Virus record (IMG/VR): IMGVR_UViG_3300024259_002152
Location: 124,001-188,000 of that record
Strand: one strand, 5' to 3'
DNA: 64,000 nucleotides
In this document: piece by piece, positions 11,650-24,595 of the stretch
How the letters are laid out: each line of letters begins with the position of its first letter
Position numbering within the stretch: the first letter of the stretch is position 1
Notes under the pieces: generated by a model
Database searches by the model: none
What the model saw: only the letters and a program-made list of their open reading frames with translations
Told to the model about the DNA's origin: nothing
Made by a program: the position numbers and the translations under genes

Positions 11650-12681
11650 ATGAATGTAGTTTTAGTCATACCAACTGGTATTGGTTGCGAAATCGGCGGC
11701 GACGCAGGAGATGCTCAACCAGCAGCTAGATTAATAGGATCTTGTTGTGATAAATTGATTCTTCATCCAAACGTTGTCAATGCGTCGGACATCAATGAGA
11801 TGCCTCCTAATGCGTGGTATGTTGAGGGGTCCATCCTAGATAGGTTCCTAGAGGGTCGTATCATTTTGAAAAAACCTTATAGTAATAAGATTTTAGTGGT
11901 AGTAAATGCTCCAGCCGATTATCAATCTATTAATGCCGTTTCTGCCGCAAGGGCTTCTTTAGGTATAGATGCAGAGATAGTTGAATTAGAGACTCCTTTA
12001 GAACTTATTGCCAGAATGGAAAATGGTTTGGCTACGGGAGATGTTCATGGTTGGGAAGCACTAATTAGACAGGTTCAGGATTATGAGTTTGATGCTTTAG
12101 CTATTGCTACTCCTATTACTATTTCTGAAGATGATCTTATATACTATTTTAGAGAAGGTGGAGTAAATCCTGTAGGAGGGGTTGAAGCTGTGGCTTCTAA
12201 AATAATTGCTGATAGGATAAATAAGCCAGTGGCTCACGGTCCTGTTGATTATAGTATGAAAGAATTTCGGGAAGTAGTTGATCCAAGAAAAGCAGTTGAA
12301 ATAATTACAGAGAATTATATTCATTGTATATTGAAAGGACTTCATCAAGCTCCAAGAATAGTTGATGTAGGGTGGGGAGTTCGAGGTGTCCCAGAATTTT
12401 CTGTAAATTGGCTGACTCTTCCTGACATAGATGTTATGATAAGTCCTATGGGATGTTTTGGTCCTCCTCATAGGGCTTGTTTAGCCAGTAATATACCTAT
12501 CATAGTAGTTCGGGAGAACACGACTGTTTTGAATGATTTTGAGGATGGAGATGAGAGATTTATATTTGTTGATAATTATATTGAAGCAGCAGGTATGATT
12601 ATGAGTATGAGAGCAGGAGTTCATCCTCCTACTGTTAGAAGACCGTTAGAATATACGAAAGTTACAAAAAATAGGTTTTGA
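11650..12681 (+). CDS. DUF3326-family protein
   Basis: LVIPTGIGCEIGGDAGDA, LILHPNVVNASD, YVEG and GGVEA motifs. Confidence 0.85.
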   Translation: MNVVLVIPTGIGCEIGGDAGDAQPAARLIGSCCDKLILHPNVVNASDINEMPPNAWYVEGSILDRFLEGRIILKKPYSNKILVVVNAPADYQSINAVSAARASLGIDAEIVELETPLELIARMENGLATGDVHGWEALIRQVQDYEFDALAIATPITISEDDLIYYFREGGVNPVGGVEAVASKIIADRINKPVAHGPVDYSMKEFREVVDPRKAVEIITENYIHCILKGLHQAPRIVDVGWGVRGVPEFSVNWLTLPDIDVMISPMGCFGPPHRACLASNIPIIVVRENTTVLNDFEDGDERFIFVDNYIEAAGMIMSMRAGVHPPTVRRPLEYTKVTKNRF

Positions 12682-12684
12682 CAG

Positions 12685-13800
12685 ATGGACAAAAAAGAAT
12701 TTTGTAAAAAATGTAATATTTCTTTGAAAGAACTAGAAGAATATATATCAGGAAAAATGATTTTTCATGATGTCGATTTTCGAGACTTATTACTAGTTAA
12801 AAATCAGACAGAAGAGATATGTTTAGAAGCAGTTAAGCAAAATGGCTATGCTTTGCATTATGTTGAAGATCAAACAGAACAAATCTGTTTAGAAGCAGTC
12901 AAACAAAATGGTTTGGTTTTAGAATATGTTGAAGATCAAACAGAACAAATTTGTTTAGAAGCGGTTAGACAAAACAGTTGTGTTTTGGAGTTTGTTGAAA
13001 AACAAACAGAACGAATTTGTTTAGAGGCAGTGAAAAAAGGAGGTTTTGCTGTAAAGCATGTTAGAAATCAAACAGAACAAATTTGTTTAGAAGCGGTCAG
13101 GCAAACTGGTCTGGCTTTGGAGTTTGTTGAAGATAGAACAGAATACGTATGTCTAGAAGCAATTAAGCAAACTAGTAATGCTTTGAGATACATTGAAGAT
13201 CAAACAGAAGAGATATGTTTTAAGGCGATTAGGAAAAATGGTCGTGCTATTCAATATGTTAAGAATCAAACAGAACAAATTTGTATAGAAGCAGTCAAAC
13301 AAAATGGAGGTGCTTTGCAATTTATTAAAAAACAGACAGAACAAATATGTTTAGAAGCTGTTAAACAAAATGGTTATGTTTTGCGTTATGTTAAAAATCA
13401 AACAGATGAAATCCGTTTAGAGGCAGTCAAACAATATGGTTTATCTTTGCAATTTGTTGAAAATAAGACAGAAAAAATATGTATAGAAGCAATAAGACAA
13501 ACTGGGACTGCCTTATTGTTTGTCGAGAATCAGACCGAACAAATGTGTTTAGAGGCAGTTAAACAAAATAGTTATGTTGTGAGATATGTCAAAAATCAAA
13601 AAGAAAAAATATGTGAGTTATTGTCAAAAAAACATCCTATTTTTATCCAGTACTCAGATAATTTTGATCTTGATCATATAGTTGAGCTAATAGGTAAAAA
13701 TAGGAAAGTGCTTAATTTTGTAGATTGGGATAGAGTTAATTTTGATAAAACAAAGAAAAGAAAGAAAATTAACAATAGGTTTGAAATATTAGATTTATGA
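12685..13800 (+). CDS. DUF4116-type repeat protein with C-terminal RFEILDL
   Basis: 12 tandem 22-aa repeats QTEQICLEAVKQNGxALxYVxN; terminal motif at 13777-13800. Confidence 0.85.
   Translation: MDKKEFCKKCNISLKELEEYISGKMIFHDVDFRDLLLVKNQTEEICLEAVKQNGYALHYVEDQTEQICLEAVKQNGLVLEYVEDQTEQICLEAVRQNSCVLEFVEKQTERICLEAVKKGGFAVKHVRNQTEQICLEAVRQTGLALEFVEDRTEYVCLEAIKQTSNALRYIEDQTEEICFKAIRKNGRAIQYVKNQTEQICIEAVKQNGGALQFIKKQTEQICLEAVKQNGYVLRYVKNQTDEIRLEAVKQYGLSLQFVENKTEKICIEAIRQTGTALLFVENQTEQMCLEAVKQNSYVVRYVKNQKEKICELLSKKHPIFIQYSDNFDLDHIVELIGKNRKVLNFVDWDRVNFDKTKKRKKINNRFEILDL
12805..13596 (+). repeat. 12 x 66-bp degenerate coding tandem repeat
   Basis: Recurring caaacagaacaaat(t/c)tgtttagaagc with 66-bp period. 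Confidence 0.9.
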
Positions 13801-15203: not shown

Positions 15204-15282
15204 GAGAAAAAAGGAGGATTTTGAAGCGTAATATAATAATTAGTATTACAGACTTACAAAATTGCACGATTACGGAAAAAAG

Positions 15283-15798
15283 ATGGCTAAAGATATAATA
15301 GGATTTTACGAGGGTAGAGCTAGGAACCAAGAGGGATATACTATTGACGATATAAGTGGATTTACTGATGCAGGATTGGAGAAAAATCATTGTTATATAC
15401 AGTGGATATTTCCTTTGCCAGAAAAAAGTAAAGCAGTTCCTACTTCTCCTATATTAAGACAAGGAGATATAGACGAATTTAATCGTCGTCCTGATTTACA
15501 GAAGAAGATGAGAACTATGTTTGAAATTATGCTTATGTTCTATGGTCTTAATATTTACGAACATAAAGTAAGAACTTCTTTTGAGCATTGGCATTATAGA
15601 TATCCTGTGTGGTTAACTCCTCGTAATCATAATTTTTTAAGAATAAGTAGAATAATTAGATCTGCGAAGTTATTAGGGTTAAAGGGAGAGGCGCAAATGT
15701 TTTATGATTTTTTGTGCAATATTTATAAAGATAATAAAGGGACCATAGGTCCTGTTACAAAACAATTTTGGGACGAGGCCATAACTAAAGATTTTTAA
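15283..15798 (+). CDS. opioid growth factor receptor (OGFr) conserved-domain protein
   Basis: LEKNHCYIQWIFPL and NHNFLRISRIIRS motifs. Confidence 0.85.
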   Translation: MAKDIIGFYEGRARNQEGYTIDDISGFTDAGLEKNHCYIQWIFPLPEKSKAVPTSPILRQGDIDEFNRRPDLQKKMRTMFEIMLMFYGLNIYEHKVRTSFEHWHYRYPVWLTPRNHNFLRISRIIRSAKLLGLKGEAQMFYDFLCNIYKDNKGTIGPVTKQFWDEAITKDF

Positions 15799-16129: not shown

Positions 16130-16849
16130 ATGCAAGTAAGTGATTTTAGAGATAAAAATAAAGGGGAGATAACTTTTTTATTAGGAAGTGGTCCTTCTCT
16201 TCATGATGTAAATATAGATATTATAAAGAATTATTTATGTATAGCAGTTAATTCAAGTATAGATAAATATTCTGATTGTGATTTTTTTATATCTGATGAC
16301 TCTGACATAAAAAGTTGGAATTACTATGACGTTATTAAAAAATCTCCATGTGTCAAATTTTTCTACGAGAAGAAATTTAAGAATATAGTTAGTGATTGGA
16401 AAAATATTATTTTATATGATCACAAGAGTTGGTATTCACCAGAAAACAACAGTTATTATTTGGACGGATTGAGACTTACTAAAGATGAACCGATAATAGG
16501 GGCAAGAATCTCTATGGGCTCCGCTTTGCATATTGCCTATATCCTAGGTTGTAATCCTATCGTATTGATTGGGAATGACGCGAGGGTAGTAGATGGTAAA
16601 AGATATTATTGGCAATTTCCTGGCGAGAAAAAACAATATCGCATAAAAGGTAGAAAATTTACTCGTCAAACTCAACAAATAGGTTTCGATGAAAAAGCTT
16701 ATAGAAAATATTGGGAGAGTTTTGCAGAAGTAAATAAAGATATTATAGGAAAAGAAATTAACATTATAGATGCTTCTAATAGTAGTTTAGATTGTTTTCC
16801 GAAGATGACTATTGAGGAAGTATTAGAAAAGGAGAATAAAAATGAGTAA
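16130..16849 (+). CDS. DUF115/Maf/MptE-like protein
   Basis: FLLGSGPSL, IAVN, SALHIAYILG...LIGND motifs. Confidence 0.7.
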   Translation: MQVSDFRDKNKGEITFLLGSGPSLHDVNIDIIKNYLCIAVNSSIDKYSDCDFFISDDSDIKSWNYYDVIKKSPCVKFFYEKKFKNIVSDWKNIILYDHKSWYSPENNSYYLDGLRLTKDEPIIGARISMGSALHIAYILGCNPIVLIGNDARVVDGKRYYWQFPGEKKQYRIKGRKFTRQTQQIGFDEKAYRKYWESFAEVNKDIIGKEINIIDASNSSLDCFPKMTIEEVLEKENKNE

Positions 16850-17456
16850 AGATAAAGGTATTGTGATGGCTAACGGGGTGGTCCTGAAGGATGGTTTAAA
16901 TAGATTTAAAGCTGATAGGGGGATAGTGTCACAATCTATGTCTCGTATTGCTAAAATATCAAAGGGTTTATATTCTGGGATTCTAAATTCAGATCCTGAT
17001 TTTGTTGAATTTCAGGAAGAAGCTATGGAAGGTGTTATAACAAAAGAAATTGATAAACTTTGTGATAAAGTGGTTTTAGGAGCAGAAAATCAATTGCAGA
17101 AAATATCTGCGCAAATGGTGGCCGATAGGGCAGCAAATTATCGATATTCGGGTAGTGAGAGTCGTCACTCCAATGTTGAAGAGATAGATTTATCTAAAGG
17201 TGAAGATCCAATTAGAGTTAGAGCACGGAAACCAGAAGAGAAAAAAGTTGTTATAAAAGCACAAGATTTAATCAAAGATGAAAGTAACAGGCGTGCCTGT
17301 CTAAATAAAGAAGAATTAGAGAATATAAAAGAAGTTAATAAAGATGTTAAGAAGATATCTGATCTGAGAGATAAAATATTTAAGAAAATTTCAAAAAAGA
17401 AAACGAAAAAATCTGTTAAAAAAGTAATAAGAAAAAAAGGAGTAAATAAAAAATGA
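16842..17456 (+). CDS. hypothetical protein with Lys-rich C-terminal tail
   Basis: AAGGAG RBS; ends KKISKKKTKKSVKKVIRKKGVNKK. Confidence 0.7.
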   Translation: MSKDKGIVMANGVVLKDGLNRFKADRGIVSQSMSRIAKISKGLYSGILNSDPDFVEFQEEAMEGVITKEIDKLCDKVVLGAENQLQKISAQMVADRAANYRYSGSESRHSNVEEIDLSKGEDPIRVRARKPEEKKVVIKAQDLIKDESNRRACLNKEELENIKEVNKDVKKISDLRDKIFKKISKKKTKKSVKKVIRKKGVNKK

Positions 17457-18019
17457 AAGAAAAAACAATTATAATTAAAGATGGTGTAAAATTAGATTTA
17501 TCAACTCTTAGCGAAGAGTGGATAGATGAAGAGATATTGGGAAAAGAAATGCAATATATATCTAGAATGACAGAAGGATTAACAACAGGAACCATGTCTA
17601 GTGATAAGGAATATATCCTTTTAAAAAATAAGGTTGTTGATGAAATGATCAAAAATAAAGTTGTATCCCTAAAAAAGGAATTATGTGAGGCAGCGAAGAA
17701 AAAAACTGACATTTATGACCAAGCGGATATGATTCAGGCGCAAGCCCTCCAGAGGATTCAGGATAATGCAAGAGCAGTAGCTAGAGAGAATGATAGGGAG
17801 ATGCCTATAGATAAATTAAAGGATATCGTAACAAAATACAACCTAAAAGATCCTGCCCTTGATTGCATAGCTGATCATCCCAACATCGAGAAAGTAGCAG
17901 GAAAGGTGCAGAAAAAGACGATAAAAAAGAAGAAAGTTAAGAAAAAAATACTTAAGAAAAAAATAGCTAGGAAAAAAATAGTTAAGAAAAAGGTTACTAA
18001 GAAACGTGATAGGCGATAA
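17453..18019 (+). CDS. hypothetical protein with histone H1-like pentapeptide tail
   Basis: KKTIK-KKKVK-KKILK-KKIAR-KKIVK-KKVTK. Confidence 0.7.
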   Translation: MKEKTIIIKDGVKLDLSTLSEEWIDEEILGKEMQYISRMTEGLTTGTMSSDKEYILLKNKVVDEMIKNKVVSLKKELCEAAKKKTDIYDQADMIQAQALQRIQDNARAVARENDREMPIDKLKDIVTKYNLKDPALDCIADHPNIEKVAGKVQKKTIKKKKVKKKILKKKIARKKIVKKKVTKKRDRR

Positions 18020-18737
18020 AAAGATATTAACTATAGTTACGGCTCGTGGTGGGTCGAAAGGAATTCCAGGGAAAAATTACCGAGATTTATGTGGATATCC
18101 TTTATTCATGTGGTCCATGTTGGCTTCTTTAGAATCAAAATATATTGATGCTACTATTTTATCTTCTAATTGTGATGAGTGTTTGAGAATTTGTGAGCAA
18201 TGTGCAGGAGAGGTAGATAAAGATAAGACATATGGTTGGATTGTAAGACCAGACGAATATGCTACAGATCTTTCTAAGAATGAAGATGCTCTTATTCATG
18301 CTCTGAAATTTCTTAATGAAGAATATGATGTTGTTATAAATTTACAACCTACCTCTCCTTGCAGATTGGATGGATTGTTAGATAGAAGTATCGAAGCATA
18401 TTATAAAGGAGGATATGACAGTTTATTGACCGCTGGTAAAGATACTCCTTTTATATGGCAAAAAATAGATGAAAAATGGGAATATACTGTTGATAAGAAT
18501 CCTTCTTGTGAAAGGAAGATGAGGCAAGAGTTCGATGAAAATGAATTTATCTTTCATGACAACGGCAACATTTACCTAGTAGAAAGTGAAATTTTACTTG
18601 ACACAGAATGTAGAATAGGGTATAACCCATGTGTTGTAGAGACAAGTGGTATAAATAATATCCAAATTGACCAAGAGTTTGATTTTCTTTTAATCTCTAA
18701 ACTATTGGAATCAATGAAGTTAGAAAGACCAATATGA
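18006..18737 (+). CDS. acylneuraminate cytidylyltransferase (NeuA family) #1
   Basis: TARGGSKGIPGKN, LQPTSP and NGNIY motifs. Confidence 0.9.
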   Translation: MIGDKKILTIVTARGGSKGIPGKNYRDLCGYPLFMWSMLASLESKYIDATILSSNCDECLRICEQCAGEVDKDKTYGWIVRPDEYATDLSKNEDALIHALKFLNEEYDVVINLQPTSPCRLDGLLDRSIEAYYKGGYDSLLTAGKDTPFIWQKIDEKWEYTVDKNPSCERKMRQEFDENEFIFHDNGNIYLVESEILLDTECRIGYNPCVVETSGINNIQIDQEFDFLLISKLLESMKLERPI

Positions 18738-18801
18738 TGAAAATAAAGGAATTGATTATCTTTTTACAGAACGTTATTGTAGTTTTGTAAAGGAGATAAA
18801 T

Positions 18802-19725
18802 ATGAATAAATATTTTTGGACAGAAGAGGAGATAAATGTTGTTAGAAATACGGATTTAACTTTATCTGAAATGATGGGATTACTTCCTAATAGAACTTAT
18901 TCTGGCATTAGAGGGCAAATTAAAAAACAAGGGATATCATTAAGTAAAGAATCTATTTCAAAGGCACACACCTTGGGCCATCTAGGTATTAAAGAAGCTG
19001 ATATTGATAAAATCTTAGCAGATTCTAATTTTTTAGATATAATAAATGGTAATCTGTTGGGCGATGCATGGATAGATAAGTCTCATAACTTTGGATTGGC
19101 GAATATTAGTAAAGAATTTGTAGAACATGTTAATGTAGAACTTAATCGAATTTTTAAAAGTAATTCTAAAGTTTGTGTTAAATTGTCAAATGAGGGAAAG
19201 ATAAATGGGAAAAGATTCAAGAGAAAAAAACAATATTATATGAGTAAATCTTGTAAGCCAATTTTTCGTAATTTGTATTATCAATGGTATGAGAATGGGG
19301 AGAAAATAGTTCCAGACGAATTAGATCTTACTCCCATGTGCTGTTATTTTTGGTATATAGGAGATGGTTGTATAAATTGTAAAGAGAAAAGACAAAGCGC
19401 TTCAATATCTCTTTCCACAAATGCTTTCTCTAAAAGATGTGTGGAGAAGCTTCTTAATAAAATGCAGGATAAAATTAATGGATTTAATGCGTCTGTCCAT
19501 TTTTTGAAAGATAAACCAGTTATTTTTATTAGCGGTCGATTTGTTTTGAAATTTCTAGATTATATCGGTGATGGATTTTTAAAATCATTTTCTTATAAGT
19601 GGAATTTAAATGGTTATTCTGAACAAAAGACCGTCTGTAAGGTTTGTAATAAGGAATTTGTCCACTACGGTTTTAAGAAAAATTATAGAACTCAATGCAG
19701 TGTTTGTAGAAAGAAATTAAAATGA
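18802..19725 (+). CDS. free-standing double-motif LAGLIDADG homing endonuclease
   Basis: IINGNLLGDAWI and YFWYIGDG motifs, LSTNAFS, C-terminal CxxC...CxxC. Confidence 0.85.
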   Translation: MNKYFWTEEEINVVRNTDLTLSEMMGLLPNRTYSGIRGQIKKQGISLSKESISKAHTLGHLGIKEADIDKILADSNFLDIINGNLLGDAWIDKSHNFGLANISKEFVEHVNVELNRIFKSNSKVCVKLSNEGKINGKRFKRKKQYYMSKSCKPIFRNLYYQWYENGEKIVPDELDLTPMCCYFWYIGDGCINCKEKRQSASISLSTNAFSKRCVEKLLNKMQDKINGFNASVHFLKDKPVIFISGRFVLKFLDYIGDGFLKSFSYKWNLNGYSEQKTVCKVCNKEFVHYGFKKNYRTQCSVCRKKLK

Positions 19726-20498
19726 ATTTGATTTTTTTGGGAGTTGCTTCTGCATTAAGCAATGGTTATAACTCCAATATATTAATAGAAGATAAAAAAA
19801 ATGCAATGCTTTTTGATTGTGGAGAAGATATAAAACACTCGCTTAGGGCAGCAGGAAGAAAGGTAGAAGAATTAAATTCGGTATATATATCACATTTGCA
19901 CTCTGATCATTGCTATGGGTTGAGTTGGCTCGGATATTACTCATATTTTATTTTGAAGAGAAAAATTAATCTTTATATCCATGAAAGTTTGGTTAATGAG
20001 CTTTGGTGTATGTTGTCACCAGCTATGAATAAACTTCAAGGCGGTTGTAACTTCGAGACTCTTGCAACGTATTTTAATGTTCGTTCTATTCCTGATGATG
20101 ATCCTATTTTTTCATTTGGGACGGCGGAAATGGAGTTAATTAAAAATAAACATATTAGTTCGTTTGTTGGTAATATGTATAGTTATGGTTTGCTGATTAA
20201 AGATGATAGTTATAAAAAGGGAATATATATATCTGCTGATACTATGTTTATTCCTCCAGGCACCATTTGGAATGAAAAAATAGATTTTGTTTTTCAAGAT
20301 GTTGATGTTTTTAATTTAGGAGGTGTTCATTGTAATTATAACGTATTAAAAGAGATGCCTCTTTATTATAAAGAACGGATATGGCTTTACCACTATACTG
20401 ATCTTTCTAAATATGATGGGAAGTATGGAGAGATGCCTGATGCTGTTGCAGATGGATTTGCAGGTTTTGTTAAAGAGGGGCAAGTGTTTGAGTTTTAA
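19722..20498 (+). CDS. MBL-fold hydrolase, anti-Pycsar Apyc1-like
   Basis: FDCG, HLHSDH, LW, YFNVRS, SADT, GGVH and LYHY motifs in the order recalled for Apyc1. Confidence 0.75.
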   Translation: MNLIFLGVASALSNGYNSNILIEDKKNAMLFDCGEDIKHSLRAAGRKVEELNSVYISHLHSDHCYGLSWLGYYSYFILKRKINLYIHESLVNELWCMLSPAMNKLQGGCNFETLATYFNVRSIPDDDPIFSFGTAEMELIKNKHISSFVGNMYSYGLLIKDDSYKKGIYISADTMFIPPGTIWNEKIDFVFQDVDVFNLGGVHCNYNVLKEMPLYYKERIWLYHYTDLSKYDGKYGEMPDAVADGFAGFVKEGQVFEF

Positions 20499-20515
20499 TA
20501 TTATGAGAAATTTAT

Positions 20516-20803
20516 ATGGCAAAAGAATTAACCTCATCAGAGATAGAAGAATTGGATAGTTTAATAGAATGGGGCGGTGAATTTGGCGTAGGGTCCCCAG
20601 GATATGTGGAAACTCCCATTCATCCAAAAAGTGAGGTTGTTTCTAGTAATAATAATTTGGTTCATCCTTTTTCTGATGACGGAGTTGATGAAAGATGTTT
20701 AGAATATTGGGAAAAGATGGAATATAGAAAAAGGCCAAGAAAATTCAGAAATAAAATAGAGAATAATAAGATAAAAACCAGAATTGAAATTTTAGACTTA
20801 TAG
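20516..20803 (+). CDS. hypothetical protein with C-terminal RIEILDL
   Basis: Terminal motif at 20780-20803. Confidence 0.65.
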   Translation: MAKELTSSEIEELDSLIEWGGEFGVGSPGYVETPIHPKSEVVSSNNNLVHPFSDDGVDERCLEYWEKMEYRKRPRKFRNKIENNKIKTRIEILDL

Positions 20804-20816
20804 AGAGGTAGAAACA

Positions 20817-21110
20817 ATGAAAGGTTATGATGTATTTTTTACTGATCCAGACTCTGTTGATGAGATGAAATGTAGAGTATGTGGAACGTTTTGCGATGTG
20901 AAACGTGGAGAAAATGGTTCAACTGGATGGGCTCAAGCCATGGCGAACGGCAAAACTTTGCATGATTATTTTTATTGTCCATACAAAGAAGAAAAATGGC
21001 ACGAACAGGCATTTAGACTTGTCCAAGATATTGAAAAGTGTTATAGTCCATCTTTGAAAAAGATAATGGAAGAGGATTTAAAGAAAATGATTGAAGATAA
21101 AGGAAAATAA
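20817..21110 (+). CDS. hypothetical Zn-ribbon-like protein
   Basis: CRVCG...HDYFYCP...WH; GAGG RBS. Confidence 0.65.
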   Translation: MKGYDVFFTDPDSVDEMKCRVCGTFCDVKRGENGSTGWAQAMANGKTLHDYFYCPYKEEKWHEQAFRLVQDIEKCYSPSLKKIMEEDLKKMIEDKGK

Positions 21111-21111
21111 A

Positions 21112-21654
21112 ATGAAAACAAAAAGTTATTACGAAACAGATACCCACGTATATTTCTATGGTTCGTGTTATTCTCAATGGGCCATGAGAAGTTTTGAATT
21201 AGATGGTAATCTTTTTAATTGCTGTGAGCAGTATATGATGTATAGAAAAGCTAAACTTTTTGGAGATCATGAATCTGCTAAAAAGATTTGGAGTTCTGGA
21301 GATCCTGCTGAGCAAAAAGCATTGGGAAGAAAAGTTAAAAATTTCGATAAAGATAAGTGGGAAGAAATAGCTAGAGATGTTGTTTATAAAGCTAATTATG
21401 CTAAATTTACTCAGAATGAAGATTGTAAACAACAGCTATTAGAAACAAAACATAAAATTATTGTTGAAGCCAGTCCTACAGATTGTATCTGGGGAGTGGG
21501 TTTATGGGCTACAGACTGTAAAATATTAGATTCCAAGAATTGGAGAGGAACTAATTGGTTAGGAGAAGCCATAATGAAAGTTAGAAAAGCATTGCAGGAT
21601 ATAGATAAACAATCAAACCAAAGTTATGCCAACATAGGATGGGATAGCATGTAA
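21112..21654 (+). CDS. NADAR (YbiA/DUF1768) family hydrolase
   Basis: SQW, EQYMMYRKA, KALGR, KFTQN, VEASPTDCIWG and GTNWLGEAIM motifs. Confidence 0.93.
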   Translation: MKTKSYYETDTHVYFYGSCYSQWAMRSFELDGNLFNCCEQYMMYRKAKLFGDHESAKKIWSSGDPAEQKALGRKVKNFDKDKWEEIARDVVYKANYAKFTQNEDCKQQLLETKHKIIVEASPTDCIWGVGLWATDCKILDSKNWRGTNWLGEAIMKVRKALQDIDKQSNQSYANIGWDSM

Positions 21655-21667
21655 AGGAGAAATAAGA

Positions 21668-21913
21668 ATGCCAGAAGAGAATAAAGAGAAAAAGGTTGGA
21701 GTAGAGATTCATGGTCCTAATATTTTGCACGGCAAGAGGGCAAGATTAGTCAGAGGAGAACAAGAGGTTATTGGAGTTTTGTTAGCTAATGATAGTCAAG
21801 TTAATTCTGATAAATTCGCTTTTCAATTTGTTAATAAGCATGGAGTGAAAAGTATTAGTCAAGTGACTAAGGATGAGTTACAAAATATTGATGAGTATTT
21901 GATTGATTATTAA
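21668..21913 (+). CDS. hypothetical protein
   Basis: AAGGAG RBS. Confidence 0.6.
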   Translation: MPEENKEKKVGVEIHGPNILHGKRARLVRGEQEVIGVLLANDSQVNSDKFAFQFVNKHGVKSISQVTKDELQNIDEYLIDY

Positions 21914-21914
21914 A

Positions 21915-22298
21915 ATGGATAAAGGTGTTCTAGATATTTTCATATTAGAAGATGCTCCTGAAAGAATCAAGTGGTTTCAGCAGACCTTTGGCGATTGTAA
22001 TATAGTTTATACAAAGGATGTTGAAACAGCTTGTGATGAATTGAGGACTAAGGATTATGATCTTATATTTTTAGATAGAGATCTTGGTCATCCTAAAGAG
22101 AATGGGGAAGATGTTGCTTGGGTGATGAAAGAGGAGCAATTAGCTAGAAATGCCTGTATAGTTATCCACACGGTTAATCCTCGCGGACAAAGAAATATAA
22201 AAAAATATTTAGAACAATATCATAGAGATGTTCATCTTATTGATTTTACTTTGCTACGCAAGATGAAAAGATCTGACTTTCAGATGTCAGATTTTTAA
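21915..22298 (+). CDS. cyclic-phosphate-processing receiver-like domain protein
   Basis: IFILED, LIFLDRDLG, GEDV and IHTVNP motifs. Confidence 0.75.
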   Translation: MDKGVLDIFILEDAPERIKWFQQTFGDCNIVYTKDVETACDELRTKDYDLIFLDRDLGHPKENGEDVAWVMKEEQLARNACIVIHTVNPRGQRNIKKYLEQYHRDVHLIDFTLLRKMKRSDFQMSDF

Positions 22299-22400
22299 TT
22301 TATTGTAAACATATTTTTCAAATAAAAGAAGGTTTTTAAATCTTTATTTTGTATTTATATATTAAATACGAGATAAAGATTTTTTTATTGGAGAATAAGA

Positions 22401-22556
22401 GTGAAAAAACCCATTAATATGAAGATGGATGTGGAGATTGTTAAGAAATGTAAAAAAATAGCTAAAGAGAATAAGAAGACATTTACTCAGTTGGTTACCG
22501 ATGTTTTATTTGAATATATTAAGAATTATAAAAAGGAGAGTTCAAATGGAATATAA
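22401..22556 (+). CDS. small ribbon-helix-helix protein (51 aa, not in the ORF track)
   Basis: GGAG RBS plus GTG; MKKPINMKMDVEIVKKCKKIAKENKKTFTQLVTDVLFEYIKNY; overlaps the NeuB start. Confidence 0.65.
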   Translation: MKKPINMKMDVEIVKKCKKIAKENKKTFTQLVTDVLFEYIKNYKKESSNGI

Positions 22557-23409
22557 GAAATGTAAAGTTGTTAGTGAGTTATGTTGTAATCATGGGGGAG
22601 ACATTGATATGGCAAAAGAAATGATAATATCATCCAAATTGTGCGGGGCAGATTATGTCAAGTTCCAAAAGAGAAATCCTATTAAGGCGGTGCCTATAAA
22701 AATGCATAATCAGTCTCATCCATGTCCTATACATTCATTTGGAGAAACTTATTTAGAGCATAGGAAAAATTTAGAATTTACAATAGATCAGCATAGGCAT
22801 TTAAAAAGATATTGTGAAGAAGTTGGTATAGGGTATTCTTCTTCTGTATGGGATGAAGATTCTGCATTTGATATTATATCTTTAAATCCTGATTTTATAA
22901 AAGTTCCTTCTGCAATGAATGAAAATTATTTTTTATTGGATACTATTTTTAATAACTACAAAAGAGATGTTCATGTATCACTAGGCATGATAGGGAAAAA
23001 AGAGAAAGAAGAGTTATTCGAGTATCTTAAAGATAAAAAAAATAGGGTGGTAATATATCAAACTACTTCTTCTTATCCTGTTAAATTTGAAGAGTTGTAT
23101 TTAATGGAAATTGTCGAGTTAAAAAAGAATTTTAAAAAAGTGGGTTATAGCGGTCATCATCTTGGAATAGCAGTTGATATAAGTGCTTATACTCTTGGCG
23201 CCGAGTGGATAGAAAGGCATTTTACTTTGGATAGAACGGCAAAAGGAACTGATAATTCTGCTAGTTTAGAACTATCTGGGTTGCAAAAATTATGTAGAGA
23301 TTTAAAAGCCTGTTATAAGTCATTGGATTATAAAAAAATAGATTTTACTTTTGATGAAGAAAAAAATAGAAATAAATTAAAAATAAAAAGGGGGAGAAAT
23401 GATATCTAA
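22546..23409 (+). CDS. N-acetylneuraminate synthase (NeuB) family #1, no SAF domain
   Basis: SELCCNHGGD, YVKFQKR, SSYP, GYSGHH and IERHFT motifs; ATG at 22546 after AAGGAG. Confidence 0.9.
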   Translation: MEYKKCKVVSELCCNHGGDIDMAKEMIISSKLCGADYVKFQKRNPIKAVPIKMHNQSHPCPIHSFGETYLEHRKNLEFTIDQHRHLKRYCEEVGIGYSSSVWDEDSAFDIISLNPDFIKVPSAMNENYFLLDTIFNNYKRDVHVSLGMIGKKEKEELFEYLKDKKNRVVIYQTTSSYPVKFEELYLMEIVELKKNFKKVGYSGHHLGIAVDISAYTLGAEWIERHFTLDRTAKGTDNSASLELSGLQKLCRDLKACYKSLDYKKIDFTFDEEKNRNKLKIKRGRNDI

Positions 23410-23932
23410 AGAGGCTAAGAGAGATTACGATAAAGAATATCGTAAGAAAAACAAGGAAAAGGCACAAAAGTTTCAGCAAGAATATTATCAAACGAATAAA
23501 GAAAAAATAAAGGCAAGAATTAAGAAATATAGGATAGAGCATCCAGAAAAAGAAAATAAGGATAAAAGAAAAGCTAGAAGCAAAAGATATAGAGATAATA
23601 ATCCAATAAAAAGCCGCTTGTCTGTTTGGAAAAGTCGGGGCATAAAAATAACGGTTGAAGATTACAAAAAGATTTATAAAGATCAAGAAGGGTGTTGTTA
23701 TATTTGTGGTGTTCCAGAGGAAAAATTGAAAAATAAATTATGTCTAGATCACAATCATAAAACAGGGAATCCAAGGGGTTTACTTTGTCACAAATGTAAC
23801 TCTATGATAGGTTTTATTGAAAGGGGATATGAAGTAGATTTTAGAGATCCGATACCTATATTAAAAAATGCTATTTCTTATATCTCTAACAAACTGGACG
23901 TATCGGCAAAAAAAGTGAAAAATATGATTTGA
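23399..23932 (+). CDS. endonuclease VII-family (His-Me finger) homing endonuclease
   Basis: Q...CYICG...LCLDHNHKTGNPRGLLCHKCNSMIG; basic N-terminus. Confidence 0.88.
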   Translation: MISKEAKRDYDKEYRKKNKEKAQKFQQEYYQTNKEKIKARIKKYRIEHPEKENKDKRKARSKRYRDNNPIKSRLSVWKSRGIKITVEDYKKIYKDQEGCCYICGVPEEKLKNKLCLDHNHKTGNPRGLLCHKCNSMIGFIERGYEVDFRDPIPILKNAISYISNKLDVSAKKVKNMI

Positions 23933-23956
23933 AAGTGAATGTGGATGTAGTATAAT
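23929..23956 (+). promoter_or_regulatory. sigma70-type promoter TTGAAA-N16-TATAAT
   Basis: Near-consensus hexamers at the gene boundary before 24011. Confidence 0.55.
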
Positions 23957-24010
23957 AGACCAAGTAGATAGTGAAGATTGATATAACTACTTATTTTATA
24001 TGGATTTAGG

Positions 24011-24595
24011 ATGAAATTTAGTGATATAAAAGTTGTCGTAACTGATGTAGACGGCTGTTTAACAGATGGTCATTATGTTATAACTTCGGCATTTGAGGAT
24101 GCGAACTCTCTAATGCAGAGAATCCCCTATGTATCGAAATCTTTTCATACGAGGGATTTTGATGGTCTTGAAAGAACGATGAAGACAGGTATTAGAGTGA
24201 TCATTATAAGTCAATCAAAGGATTCAGTTATTGCTGAACAAATTAATAGATTGACTATGAGGTCAGATTCTTTTTGGAGTGATTGTTATAAGAATGGTTT
24301 TTTACGACTATTAAGAGGAGTAGAGGATAAGAAGCAAGAGTTAGATAAATATTTGGCTGAAGAAAAAATATCTTGGGATAATGTTGCTTATTTCGGTGAT
24401 GCAGAAAATGATTTGGAGAGTATAGAGCAGTCATTATATGCGGGTTGTCCTAATGATGCTGTCGATATTATTAAGAAAAATTGTAATTATTGGTCTTCAT
24501 CTCCAGGGGGCAGAGGAGTGGTTTATGATTTTTGTATGTTTATATTAAGACAAATAGAAACGGAGCGGAGTAAGAATGAAAATTTTAGAGCCTAA
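24011..24595 (+). CDS. KdsC-like HAD phosphatase
   Basis: DVDGCLTDG, KSFHTRD, YFGDAEND and GGRG motifs. Confidence 0.88.
   Translation: MKFSDIKVVVTDVDGCLTDGHYVITSAFEDANSLMQRIPYVSKSFHTRDFDGLERTMKTGIRVIIISQSKDSVIAEQINRLTMRSDSFWSDCYKNGFLRLLRGVEDKKQELDKYLAEEKISWDNVAYFGDAENDLESIEQSLYAGCPNDAVDIIKKNCNYWSSSPGGRGVVYDFCMFILRQIETERSKNENFRA

What the first reader, a model, noticed from the sequence alone, without database searches (positions are those of the whole stretch)
19722..20498. Probable anti-Pycsar (Apyc1-like) cyclic-nucleotide phosphodiesterase
Seen: MBL motifs plus LW...YFNVRS, VFQD...GGVH and WLYHY, and a length of 258 aa. These match my recollection of phage Apyc1, which degrades cCMP and cUMP. 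Inference: an anti-defence gene.
Basis: partly seen in the sequence, partly recalled or inferred. Interest (0 to 1): 0.6.

Follow-up and report, generated by a model that had tools for sequence, protein, structure and literature searches.

The report
Huge-phage Apyc1-family cyclic-nucleotide phosphodiesterase
A gene in a very large uncultured phage encodes a divergent member of the known Apyc1 enzyme family, which destroys the cyclic-nucleotide alarm signals bacteria use to abort infection; its activity and target remain untested.

Summary
It is an Apyc1-family metallo-beta-lactamase-fold phosphodiesterase.

- **Family:** Pfam PF23023 scores 58.4 bits against a cut-off of 50.
- **Sequence:** the best solved relatives are the three Apyc1 crystal structures (E 2e-21).
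- **Fold:** an AF2 model (pLDDT 96) matches those structures at Z 29-33. YhfI scores about 24 and RNase Z about 22.
- **Tree:** a fully supported branch separates it from true RNase Z.
- **Active site:** all eight metal ligands are invariant. A homodimer model passes its controls (0.89 vs 0.01). The cross-protomer nucleotide-binding loop has normal length.

Two cautions apply. The Pfam score is marginal (the founder scores 205). The Glu reported as required for cCMP hydrolysis (SBSphiJ E74) is Ser68 here, as in this gene's huge-virus clade.

The carrier is a 351-kb IMG/VR virus record with no cyclase and no cNMP-binding gene. Bacterial relatives often sit beside class III cyclases, so a cNMP "eraser" is the best reading. 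In the three closest relatives the gene lies near NADAR and cREC genes, which suggests a counter-defence block.

The anti-Pycsar role is plausible but inferred. The host, substrate range and expression are unknown. I rate it a new variant of a known kind, of modest interest.

The parts
19722..20498 (+). Apyc1-family MBL-fold (class II) phosphodiesterase gene, 258 aa
   Evidence: ORF. PF23023 58.4 bits against GA 50. PDB phmmer best hits are Apyc1 7u2r, 7t28 and 7u2s. AF2 model pLDDT 96.4. Foldseek and VIA best matches are Apyc1.
19893..19910 (+). Codons of the HxHxDH metal-binding motif (H58 L59 H60 S61 D62 H63)
   Evidence: H58, H60, D62 and H63 are invariant in the 107-sequence alignment A1. 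They align with SBSphiJ H64/H66/D68/H69, whose triple His mutant is inactive (PMC9117128).
19923..19925 (+). Codon of Ser68, at the position of SBSphiJ Apyc1 Glu74 (reported as required for cCMP hydrolysis)
   Evidence: Alignment gives E in 76 and S in 30 of 110 sequences. S is confined to the query's near clade. In the dimer model, S68 touches S61 of the other chain.
20028..20060 (+). Codons of loop 103-113, the counterpart of the Apyc1 nucleotide-binding loop that reaches into the partner's active site
   Evidence: DSSP shows a loop between helix 88-102 and helix 114-117. Residues 104-111 lie in the predicted interface and touch 145-147 of the other chain. The W-to-YF distance is 21 residues, against 19-22 in active Apyc1s.
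20151..20393 (+). Span holding the codons of the remaining invariant metal ligands H144, D173, H203 and H224
   Evidence: These are invariant columns in A1.
18802..19725 (+). Free-standing LAGLIDADG homing-endonuclease gene directly upstream; its stop overlaps the Apyc1 start (ATGA)
   Evidence: PF03161 E 4e-20. The overlap is read. It is absent from all 73 related IMG/VR loci.
20516..21110 (+). Two small ORFs (95 and 97 aa) between the phosphodiesterase and NADAR genes. The second is Cys-rich and conserved in L027 and L028.
   Evidence: No Pfam family. tblastn gives 48-56% identity in L027 and L028.
21091..21654 (+). NADAR-domain gene (the public gene call starts at 21112)
   Evidence: PF08719 E 5e-50. 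It lies next to the MBL gene in L027, L028, L029 and L085.
21903..22298 (+). cREC (cyclic-phosphate-processing receiver-like) gene, followed by a terminator-like hairpin at 22267-22296
   Evidence: PF20274 E 7e-13. Conserved in L027, L028 and L029 at 54-84%. The hairpin is, where the count equals chance expectation, so this is weak.

Best explanation
The gene encodes a homodimeric, two-metal, MBL-fold (class II) 3',5'-cyclic-mononucleotide phosphodiesterase of the Apyc1 family. It is carried by a huge (over 350 kb) uncultured phage. The HxHxDH motif plus H144, D173, H203 and H224 bind the two metal ions that activate water to open the cyclic phosphodiester, giving 5'-NMP. A loop (residues 103-113) and the stretch after the motif (Y65, S68) from the partner chain close the nucleotide pocket. 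The phage has no cyclase and no cNMP-binding protein of its own, so the enzyme most likely erases host-made cNMP signals during infection. Pycsar's cCMP and cUMP are the known case. This would keep cNMP-activated abortive-infection effectors silent. It probably acts alongside the neighbouring NADAR and cREC genes as a small block against nucleotide-based immunity. Shown here: the ORF, family, fold, intact metal site, predicted dimer and gene neighbourhoods. Inferred: cNMP hydrolysis, pyrimidine cNMP acceptance and the anti-defence role.
For: - Family: PF23023 is over its threshold, and none of the 14 control genomes reaches the cut-off.
- Solved relatives: the best are Apyc1 7u2r, 7t28 and 7u2s, E 2e-21 to 5e-17 over the whole length. 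YhfI scores E 0.5 and RNase Z matches only the first 70 residues.
- Fold: AF2 model pLDDT 96.4. Foldseek E 3e-23 and TM 0.85/0.90 to 7u2r, against about 1e-14 and 0.70 for YhfI. VIA Z 32.6, 31.9 and 29.1 at rmsd 1.7-2.1 A for Apyc1, against 23.8 for YhfI and 22.4 for RNase Z.
- Active site: eight metal ligands are invariant in 107 homologues.
- Dimer: score 0.89, best of 3 controls 0.01. That mark was reached by 20 of 30 solved pairs of one chain and 1 of 23 single chains. Runs agree in 100% of contacts and partner pLDDT is 93. The loop and S68 lie at the partner's active site.
- Loop: its length is within the range of active enzymes.
- Tree: a 100% branch separates verified RNase Z from a group that holds the query, SBSphiJ, BSP38 and phage G Apyc1.
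- Bacterial relatives (33-40% identity): a class III cyclase lies adjacent in 7 of 13 loci from five lineages. One has a kinase-cNMP-binding gene in between.
- The virus: no Guanylate_cyc domain and no cNMP_binding domain.
- Neighbours: NADAR and cREC are conserved in the three closest huge-virus relatives. Both are predicted counter-conflict enzymes of jumbo phages (PMC7824862, PMC9503650).
- Literature: Apyc1 degrades all four cNMPs and rescues phage from Pycsar (PMC9117128). The family is ancestral in bacteria and was co-opted by phages several times (PMC11370490).
Against: - SBSphiJ E74, reported as required for cCMP hydrolysis, is Ser68 here. All experimentally verified Apyc1s I could align keep Glu.
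- The Pfam score is marginal: 58 bits, against 205 for the founder. The closest IMG/VR relative scores 47.7, below the threshold.
- Identity to verified Apyc1s is only 24-30%.
- Over 80% of detected Apyc1 homologues are chromosomal and probably housekeeping (PMC11370490), so family membership alone does not imply anti-defence.
- The host is unknown, so the presence of Pycsar could not be checked.
- The most widely conserved neighbours across related viruses are nonulosonic-acid genes (7 loci), not NADAR/cREC (3-4 loci).
- I found no capsid, terminase or sheath gene in the 351 kb. 'Phage' therefore rests on the IMG/VR/CheckV classification, the tRNA array and the gene content.
Confidence: 0.6

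Rival explanations
1. It is the same enzyme chemistry but a different purpose. The phage uses it to collapse the host's housekeeping cAMP/cGMP signalling (host takeover, for example shutting cNMP-regulated transcription or transport) rather than to counter an immune system.
For: The nearest bacterial relatives sit in signalling modules: CHASE2-cyclase, REC-cyclase, a kinase-cNMP_binding gene and a SulP-cNMP_binding gene. Tesson et al. conclude that the family evolved to regulate cNMP signalling (PMC11370490). The E74-to-Ser change could reduce pyrimidine cNMP use.
Against: Verified family members do not discriminate between bases (PMC9117128, PMC11370490). The neighbours NADAR and cREC point to conflict functions (PMC7824862). 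Every phage copy tested so far acts as a counter-defence.
Confidence: 0.18
2. It is a minimal RNase Z-like endonuclease that trims the 3' trailers of the phage's own tRNA precursors before CCA addition.
For: The virus carries 31 tRNA genes, none with an encoded CCA. It also carries a CCA-adding enzyme (phrog_2244). The only RNase Z-like match in the 351 kb is this gene. Public pipelines name homologues 'ribonuclease BN'.
Against: The RNase Z models match only positions 2-140 of 302 at 57 bits, against a cut-off of 293. The roughly 50-residue flexible arm that holds tRNA is missing: 258 aa against about 305. A 100% branch separates it from true RNase Z. The founder Apyc1 gives the same weak RNase Z score. 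The gene lies 184 kb from the tRNA array. Host RNase Z can serve the phage.
Confidence: 0.06
3. It works with NADAR and cREC on ADP-ribose-derived or 2',3'-cyclic-phosphate substrates (RNA-end repair or erasure of ADPr-based signals), not on 3',5'-cNMPs.
For: There is conserved linkage to NADAR and cREC in L027, L028 and L029. cREC is predicted to open cyclic phosphates (PMC7824862, PMC9503650). A terminator-like hairpin right after cREC suggests one unit (weak).
Against: The linkage is limited to one lineage of related viruses. 69 of the 73 viral loci show no NADAR or cREC match by tblastn within about 6 kb. The bacterial context is cyclases, not ADPr enzymes. The family's only measured activity is on 3',5'-cNMPs.
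Confidence: 0.06
4. It belongs to the phage's nonulosonic (sialic-like) acid pathway, for example as a CMP-sugar phosphodiesterase.
For: It lies between a CMP-sugar cytidylyltransferase gene and NeuB, with an MptE/Maf-like gene nearby. This order recurs in 7 viral loci down to 36% identity.
Against: Related phages keep gene order by descent, so synteny among them is weak evidence. To my knowledge no such pathway uses an MBL enzyme. Bacterial relatives are not next to these genes.
Confidence: 0.04
5. It is a weak or inactive relic, because the Glu-to-Ser change and the divergent loop cripple catalysis.
For: E74 is required in SBSphiJ (PMC9117128). Homologues with altered loops show weak or no cleavage (PMC11370490).
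Against: All metal ligands and the fold are fully conserved. Of the ten Ser-bearing sequences on the tree, nine fall in two sets within the query's clade, and parsimony needs four changes. The identical protein recurs in five samples. The loop length is normal.
Confidence: 0.06

Closest known systems
Apyc1 of Bacillus phages SBSphiJ and Bsp38 (PDB 7T28) and Paenibacillus Apyc1 (PDB 7U2R, 7U2S); Hobbs et al. 2022
   Same: They share the Pfam family and nearly the same length (245-257 aa). The fold matches at Z 29-33 and rmsd 1.7-2.1 A. They share the HxHxDH motif and all other metal ligands, the predicted homodimer and a cross-protomer loop of like length. The phage copies are likewise carried with no partner cyclase.
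   Different: Identity is only 24-30%. The Pfam score is 58 bits against 205. The Glu after the motif (E74) is Ser68. Tyr65 sits on the dimer axis where others have Gly. The C-terminus is about 20 residues longer and conserved (PDAxADGFAGFVKxGQ). The host is unknown and evidently not a Bacillus phage lineage.
Chromosomal Apyc1-like phosphodiesterases of Legionella, cyanobacteria, Alphaproteobacteria and Desulfobacterota (Tesson et al. 2024)
   Same: They are closer in sequence (33-40%) than the Bacillus-phage enzymes. They have the same length, the same C-terminal motif and the same ligands.
   Different: They keep Glu at the E74 position. In 7 of 13 loci they sit next to class III cyclases, as the eraser of a signalling module. 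The window's gene has no cyclase in 351 kb.
Bacillus megaphage G gp388, annotated Apyc1 (PMC12484599)
   Same: It is an Apyc1-family gene on a genome of about 0.5 Mb. It is 29% identical over 98% of the length.
   Different: Phage G's copy groups with the SBSphiJ clade (175 bits, Glu kept). The window's copy belongs to a separate clade known only from metagenomic huge-virus contigs.
B. subtilis YhfI (PDB 6KNS/6KNT), a class II phosphodiesterase that prefers cAMP/cGMP
   Same: It has the MBL fold, a dimer, HxHxDH and about 245 aa.
   Different: Sequence E is 0.5 against 2e-21 for Apyc1. Z is 23.8 against 32.6. NF041851 scores 20 bits against a cut-off of 400. YhfI lacks the extended loop reported as specific to Apyc1.
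RNase Z / ElaC (tRNA 3' endonuclease)
   Same: The N-terminal half with HxHxDH is recognisably similar, at 57 bits to TIGR02651.
   Different: It falls far below the equivalog cut-offs. It has no flexible arm. It is separated by a 100% branch on the tree.

Membership tests
Apyc1 (PF23023, anti-Pycsar cNMP phosphodiesterase) | Score over Pfam's gathering threshold for PF23023 | tested here: met
   58.4 bits against 50, covering residues 5-238, and 58.3 bits in the six-frame search. The margin is small: SBSphiJ scores 205 and the closest relative L027 47.7. None of 14 control genomes exceeds the cut-off.
Apyc1 (PF23023, anti-Pycsar cNMP phosphodiesterase) | MBL fold of class II phosphodiesterases, closest to the solved Apyc1 structures | tested here: met
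   Model pLDDT 96.4. Foldseek ranks 1-4 are Apyc1. VIA Z is 32.6, 31.9 and 29.1; the next family scores 25.3 and YhfI 23.8.
Apyc1 (PF23023, anti-Pycsar cNMP phosphodiesterase) | HxHxDH motif and the further His/Asp ligands of the two metal ions | tested here: met
   H58, H60, D62, H63, H144, D173, H203 and H224 are invariant in 107 homologues. They align to SBSphiJ H64/H66/D68/H69.
Apyc1 (PF23023, anti-Pycsar cNMP phosphodiesterase) | Homodimer in which a loop of one chain reaches the other chain's active site | tested here: met
   This is a prediction only. The score is 0.89 and the best of 3 controls 0.01. That mark was reached by 20 of 30 solved pairs of one chain and 1 of 23 single chains. 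Contacts agree 100% across runs and partner pLDDT is 93. Residues 104-111 touch 145-152 of the partner. The pass may reflect likeness to solved Apyc1 dimers.
Apyc1 (PF23023, anti-Pycsar cNMP phosphodiesterase) | Nucleotide-binding loop neither shortened nor lengthened (needed for activity, PMC11370490) | tested here: met
   There are 21 residues between the conserved W and YF. SBSphiJ has 22, Bsp38 21, P. sp. J14 19, P. xerothermodurans 20 and Legionella 20. The loop sequence itself is not conserved.
Apyc1 (PF23023, anti-Pycsar cNMP phosphodiesterase) | Glu five residues after HxHxDH (SBSphiJ E74), required for cCMP hydrolysis | tested here: not met
   The query has Ser68. Glu occurs in 76 and Ser in 30 of 110 aligned sequences. 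All verified Apyc1s that I aligned have Glu.
Apyc1 (PF23023, anti-Pycsar cNMP phosphodiesterase) | Tyr of the loop (SBSphiJ Y112) | tested here: not met
   It aligns with Lys104. The Tyr is also absent from the active Paenibacillus enzymes and from phage G. It is therefore not a family-wide feature, and loop alignment is uncertain.
Apyc1 (PF23023, anti-Pycsar cNMP phosphodiesterase) | Hydrolysis of cCMP and cUMP as well as cAMP and cGMP to 5'-NMP | not testable with these tools
   This needs the purified enzyme and HPLC.
Apyc1 (PF23023, anti-Pycsar cNMP phosphodiesterase) | Protection of a phage from a Pycsar operon | not testable with these tools
   This needs a plaque assay. The host, and whether it has Pycsar, are unknown.
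RNase Z | Score over the NCBIfam equivalog cut-offs | tested here: not met
   TIGR02651 scores 57.3 bits against 292.95 and NF000801 55.4 against 252. True RNase Z outgroups score 299-365.
RNase Z | Flexible arm (tRNA exosite) and the C-terminal half of the model | tested here: not met
   Only model positions 2-140 of 302 are matched. The protein is about 50 residues shorter than RNase Z.
YhfI-type cyclic-nucleotide-degrading phosphodiesterase (NF041851) | Score over the equivalog cut-off, or best similarity to YhfI | tested here: not met
   NF041851 scores 19.9 bits against 400. phmmer to 6kns gives E 0.52. Z is 23.8, against 32.6 for Apyc1.

The most novel reading that the evidence does not exclude
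The Ser68 clade, found only on huge-virus contigs, may be a re-tuned Apyc1 with a changed substrate range. Together with the conserved NADAR and cREC neighbours it would form a dedicated three-enzyme 'signal eraser' cassette of megaphages. That cassette would disarm several nucleotide-based defences at once: cNMP signals, ADP-ribose-derived signals or DNA ADP-ribosylation, and cyclic-phosphate products.
Probability: 0.15. Interest if true: 0.55.

Novelty: new variant of a known kind. Interest (0 to 1): 0.33.

Why it matters
If active, this extends Apyc1-type signal erasure from Bacillus and Staphylococcus phages to an uncultured lineage of 0.3-0.55 Mb phages. That would be a further independent co-option of a bacterial cNMP phosphodiesterase by viruses. 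It would also imply that the unknown hosts use cNMP-based immunity. The natural Glu-to-Ser replacement at a residue reported as essential offers a ready-made test of what that residue does. The Apyc1-NADAR-cREC neighbourhood is a compact place to look for further counter-defence genes, such as the two small conserved ORFs in between. Otherwise this is an ordinary annotation: a recognisable member of a described family.

Tried and rejected
- **Whole-region DNA search.** Megablast of window 18000-24000 against 50,697 phage records found nothing.
- **Virion hallmark genes.** I found none in the 351-kb record. The searches covered Terminase_6N, Terminase_6C, Phage_sheath_1, Phage_capsid and Capsid_NCLDV (the last rang nowhere, so it is uninformative), plus phrog_2. 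Seven of the eight largest ORFs scanned had no PHROG match; the eighth is the CCA-adding enzyme. tblastn of a 695-aa ORF against phages found nothing. The record is about 73% complete, so these genes may lie in the missing part.
- **Sample identifiers.** A literature search for the sample and run accessions found no paper.
- **Names of relatives.** The listing of cluster members gave almost no names or accessions.
- **Promoter scan.** Promoter-like sites were fewer than in shuffles, and terminator-like sites matched chance. Only the hairpin after cREC is mentioned, as weak evidence.
- **PADLOC on the bacterial cyclases.** The PycC models hit only the shared class III cyclase domain. CHASE2 and REC sensor architectures argue for signalling cyclases, so I do not call these Pycsar.
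- **Host.** No species-representative genome has a relative above 40% identity, so no host could be inferred.
- **RNase Z reading.** Rejected on the cut-offs, the missing arm and the tree.
- **Not used.** I did not run the large profile search (search of protein representatives), because the word search and family scans settled the family. No genetic code other than table 11 was used: stop codon use is ordinary and there are no suppressor tRNAs.
Full report
**1. The observation**

The window holds one ORF at 19722-20498 on the + strand, 258 aa with an ATG start. The frame is open for only four codons upstream. The alignment with homologues starts at Met1, so the gene model is secure. Its ATG overlaps the stop of the upstream gene (ATGA).
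- HLHSDH, residues 58-63
- LW...YFNVRS, residues 94-122
- VFQD...GGVH, residues 190-203
- WLYHY, residues 221-225

The identical protein is called on ten contigs; the five shown come from five different samples.

**2. What the protein is**

- **Pfam.** It is placed in PF23023 (Anti-Pycsar_Apyc1) at 58.4 bits against a gathering score of 50, over residues 5-238. The generic MBL families score much lower.
- **Control genomes.** In a six-frame search none of 14 control genomes reaches the cut-off. These include B. subtilis, which has YhfI and RNase Z. The window's gene does reach it.
- **Solved structures by sequence.** The three best matches are the Apyc1 crystal structures 7u2r, 7t28 and 7u2s (E 2e-21 to 5e-17, whole length). 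RNase Z matches only the first 70 residues (E 5e-8), and YhfI is at E 0.5.
- **NCBIfam.** The RNase Z equivalogs score 55-57 bits against cut-offs of 252-293. The founding SBSphiJ Apyc1 behaves the same way.
- **Fold.** An AF2 model built on 107 homologues has pLDDT 96.4. Foldseek ranks Apyc1 chains first to fourth (E 3e-23 to 9e-20, TM up to 0.90). The YhfI/ElaC-like group follows at about 1e-14 and TM 0.70. VIA-align gives Z 32.6, 31.9 and 29.1 (rmsd 1.7-2.1 A over 229-238 residues) for Apyc1. The next family scores 25.3, YhfI 23.8 and RNase Z 22.4.
- **Tree.** On a maximum-likelihood tree of 94 sequences, a branch with 100% SH-aLRT support separates 13 RNase Z sequences from an 81-row group. 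Seven of the 13 were checked by NCBIfam: six clear both RNase Z cut-offs and the seventh clears one. The 81-row group contains the query, 35 IMG/VR proteins, the bacterial relatives and the Apyc1s of SBSphiJ, BSP38 and phage G. The backbone inside that group is unresolved. The query lies in a well-supported 25-row clade made only of metagenomic and huge-virus sequences.

It is not met.

**3. Active site and quaternary structure**

H58, H60, D62, H63, H144, D173, H203 and H224 are invariant across the 107 homologues. They align with the residues whose mutation inactivates SBSphiJ Apyc1 (PMC9117128).

A two-copy model scores 0.89, with 0.01 for the best of three controls. That mark was reached by 20 of 30 solved pairs of one chain and 1 of 23 single chains. 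The runs agree in 100% of contacts, and partner pLDDT is 93. This supports a dimer but does not show one, and the pass may reflect likeness to solved Apyc1 dimers.

In the model, loop 104-111 of one chain touches 145-152 of the other, next to H144. S68 touches S61, which lies inside HxHxDH of the other chain. Y65 meets Y65 on the axis. This is the arrangement described for Apyc1, where a loop from the opposing monomer completes the nucleotide pocket (PMC9117128, PMC11370490).

Tesson et al. found that homologues with shortened or lengthened loops lose activity. Here the loop is 21 residues between the conserved W and YF. The experimentally active enzymes have 19-22.

**4. Where it departs from the verified enzymes**

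- SBSphiJ E74 is reported as required for cCMP hydrolysis. It aligns with Ser68. Glu is found in 76 of 110 aligned sequences, including every verified Apyc1 that I could align and all bacterial relatives. Ser is found in 30, all of them close relatives of the query.
- On the tree, ten sequences carry Ser. Nine fall in two sets within the query's clade and one lies outside it. Parsimony needs four changes.
- SBSphiJ Y112 aligns with Lys104. That Tyr is also missing from the active Paenibacillus enzymes and from phage G, so it does not define the family.
- The Pfam score is marginal. SBSphiJ scores 205, phage G 175, Legionella 96 and the query 58. The closest IMG/VR relative scores 47.7, below the threshold.

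I therefore file the protein in the Apyc1 sequence and structure family, as a distinct Ser-bearing variant. Its pyrimidine cNMP activity is not established.

**5. The carrier**

The window is bases 124001-188000 of a linear IMG/VR virus record of 350,866 bp. CheckV estimates it to be 73% complete. Its features:
- GC content of 33%, with nearly all genes on one strand and ordinary stop codon use under table 11.
- Bacterial-type replication genes: DnaE in two ORFs, DnaB and a type IA topoisomerase.
- A Ro60/TROVE protein, a sensor histidine kinase and a CCA-adding enzyme.
- 31 tRNA genes in one 10-kb array, with no suppressor tRNA.

I could not find a capsid, terminase or sheath gene with the families tried. 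'Huge phage' therefore rests on the record's classification and gene content.

The record has one PF23023 gene, no class III cyclase domain, no cNMP-binding domain and no true RNase Z.

**6. Context**

In the window the order of genes is:
- MptE/Maf-like gene
- two unknown ORFs
- CMP-sugar cytidylyltransferase
- LAGLIDADG homing endonuclease
- the phosphodiesterase
- two small ORFs
- NADAR
- a small ORF
- cREC
- NeuB
- endonuclease VII
- HAD phosphatase

The phosphodiesterase-NADAR-cREC order recurs in the three closest viral relatives, on contigs of 548, 461 and 298 kb (50-61% identity). NADAR and cREC have been proposed as counter-NAD+/ADPr and cyclic-phosphate enzymes of jumbo phages (PMC7824862, PMC9503650).

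The nonulosonic-acid genes flank the phosphodiesterase in seven viral loci, down to 36% identity. Because these viruses are related, I read this as inherited gene order rather than a functional link. I keep it as a low-probability rival.

Seventy-three IMG/VR contigs carry relatives, 18 of them 200 kb or longer.

**7. Bacterial relatives**

Full-length relatives at 33-40% identity occur in Legionella, cyanobacteria, Alphaproteobacteria, Parachlamydiaceae and Desulfobacterota. In 7 of 13 loci a class III nucleotide cyclase lies next to the gene. Four of these are CHASE2-cyclases, one is a REC-cyclase and two carry other architectures. In a Rhodospirillaceae MAG a kinase-cNMP_binding gene lies between the cyclase and the phosphodiesterase.

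This writer-reader-eraser arrangement is independent contextual evidence that this branch of the family hydrolyses cNMPs. It agrees with Tesson et al., who conclude that Apyc1 arose in bacteria for cNMP signalling and was co-opted by phages several times (PMC11370490). PADLOC's PycC models hit only the shared cyclase domain, so I do not call these loci Pycsar.

**8. Mechanism and rivals**

The best reading is a two-metal cNMP phosphodiesterase that a cyclase-less phage uses to erase host cNMP signals, with Pycsar's cCMP and cUMP as the known target (confidence about 0.6).

| Rival | Confidence |
|---|---|
| Same chemistry aimed at housekeeping cAMP/cGMP | 0.18 |
| RNase Z-like trimming of the phage's 31 CCA-less tRNAs, countered by the missing arm and the tree | 0.06 |
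| Joint action with NADAR/cREC on ADPr or 2',3'-cyclic substrates | 0.06 |
| A role in the sialic-like pathway | 0.04 |
| A crippled enzyme | 0.06 |

**9. Novelty**

Apyc1 has been described since 2022 and is already annotated in megaphage G (PMC12484599). Its bacterial origin and repeated capture by phages are published. What is new here:
- a clade restricted to huge uncultured viruses that sits at the edge of the Pfam model;
- a Ser in place of the reported catalytic Glu;
- a conserved NADAR/cREC neighbourhood.

That makes it a new variant of a known kind, of modest interest (0.33).

**10. Limits**

- No biochemical, expression or host data could be obtained.
- The large profile search was not needed.
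- No alternative genetic code was used.

Noticed in passing
window 18802-19725 (+): A free-standing LAGLIDADG homing-endonuclease gene sits between the cytidylyltransferase and the phosphodiesterase. Its stop overlaps the next start (ATGA). None of the 73 related IMG/VR loci has a homologue there, so it looks like a recent insertion in this lineage.
   Followed up: partly
window 3991-6972 (+): A UvrD-type helicase of 993 aa is interrupted by an intein (Intein_splicing/Hint between the N- and C-terminal helicase domains). The relative on P0009's contig has a 639-aa UvrD without it.
   Followed up: no
window 16130-18737, 22501-24595 and 27474-63238 (+): There is a large glycan gene set: MptE/Maf-like, CMP-sugar cytidylyltransferase, NeuB, HAD phosphatase, a GT1+GT2 fusion, GDP-mannose 4,6-dehydratase, a B12-radical SAM enzyme and UDP-GlcNAc 2-epimerase. 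A long run of 200-330-aa ORFs lies from about 29 to 64 kb, and the two I scanned had no Pfam match. The virus seems to make and transfer a sialic-acid-like sugar.
   Followed up: partly
window 15262-15798 (+): A protein with the OGFr_N domain (opioid growth factor receptor conserved region, E 2e-18) of unknown role in a phage.
   Followed up: no
window 20817-21110 (+): A 97-aa Cys-rich ORF (CxxC...C) lies between the phosphodiesterase and NADAR. It is conserved at 48-56% in L027 and L028 and has no family. It is a candidate further counter-defence gene.
   Followed up: partly
window 11650-13800 (+): A DUF3326 protein (E 5e-73) is followed by a protein made of seven DUF4116 repeats.
   Followed up: no
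whole window and contig G000:C1: Nearly every gene over 350 kb is on one strand. GC skew is strongly positive throughout the window (+0.22 to +0.41), with no switch inside it.
   Followed up: no
G000:C1:327905-338016 (outside the window): An array of 31 tRNA genes, none with an encoded 3' CCA. An 837-aa CCA-adding enzyme lies at G000:C1:232035-234548. No true RNase Z is present in the record.
   Followed up: yes
G000:C1:112190-113605 and 116542-118515 (L014): Bacterial-type DNA polymerase III alpha (DnaE) is encoded in two separate ORFs about 3 kb apart: PHP plus the start of the NTPase domain, then the rest plus fingers and HHH. The gene is either split or interrupted.
   Followed up: no
G000:C1:283387-285114 (L020) and 243354-245459 (L018): A Ro60/TROVE-vWA protein and a Cache-PAS sensor histidine kinase are encoded by the virus.
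   Followed up: no
L109:1621-5753 (Rhodospirillaceae MAG): Three genes lie in a row on one strand: CHASE2-class III cyclase, protein kinase-cNMP_binding, and an Apyc1-family phosphodiesterase. Together they form a complete writer-reader-eraser module.
   Followed up: partly
contig of P0002 (JGI 3300072015, 27.5 kb): In the closest relative (65% identity) a HisKA/HATPase_c kinase gene lies downstream of the phosphodiesterase, where the window has NADAR and cREC. An IS200/IS605 pair (Y1_Tnp + OrfB/TnpB) lies upstream.
   Followed up: no
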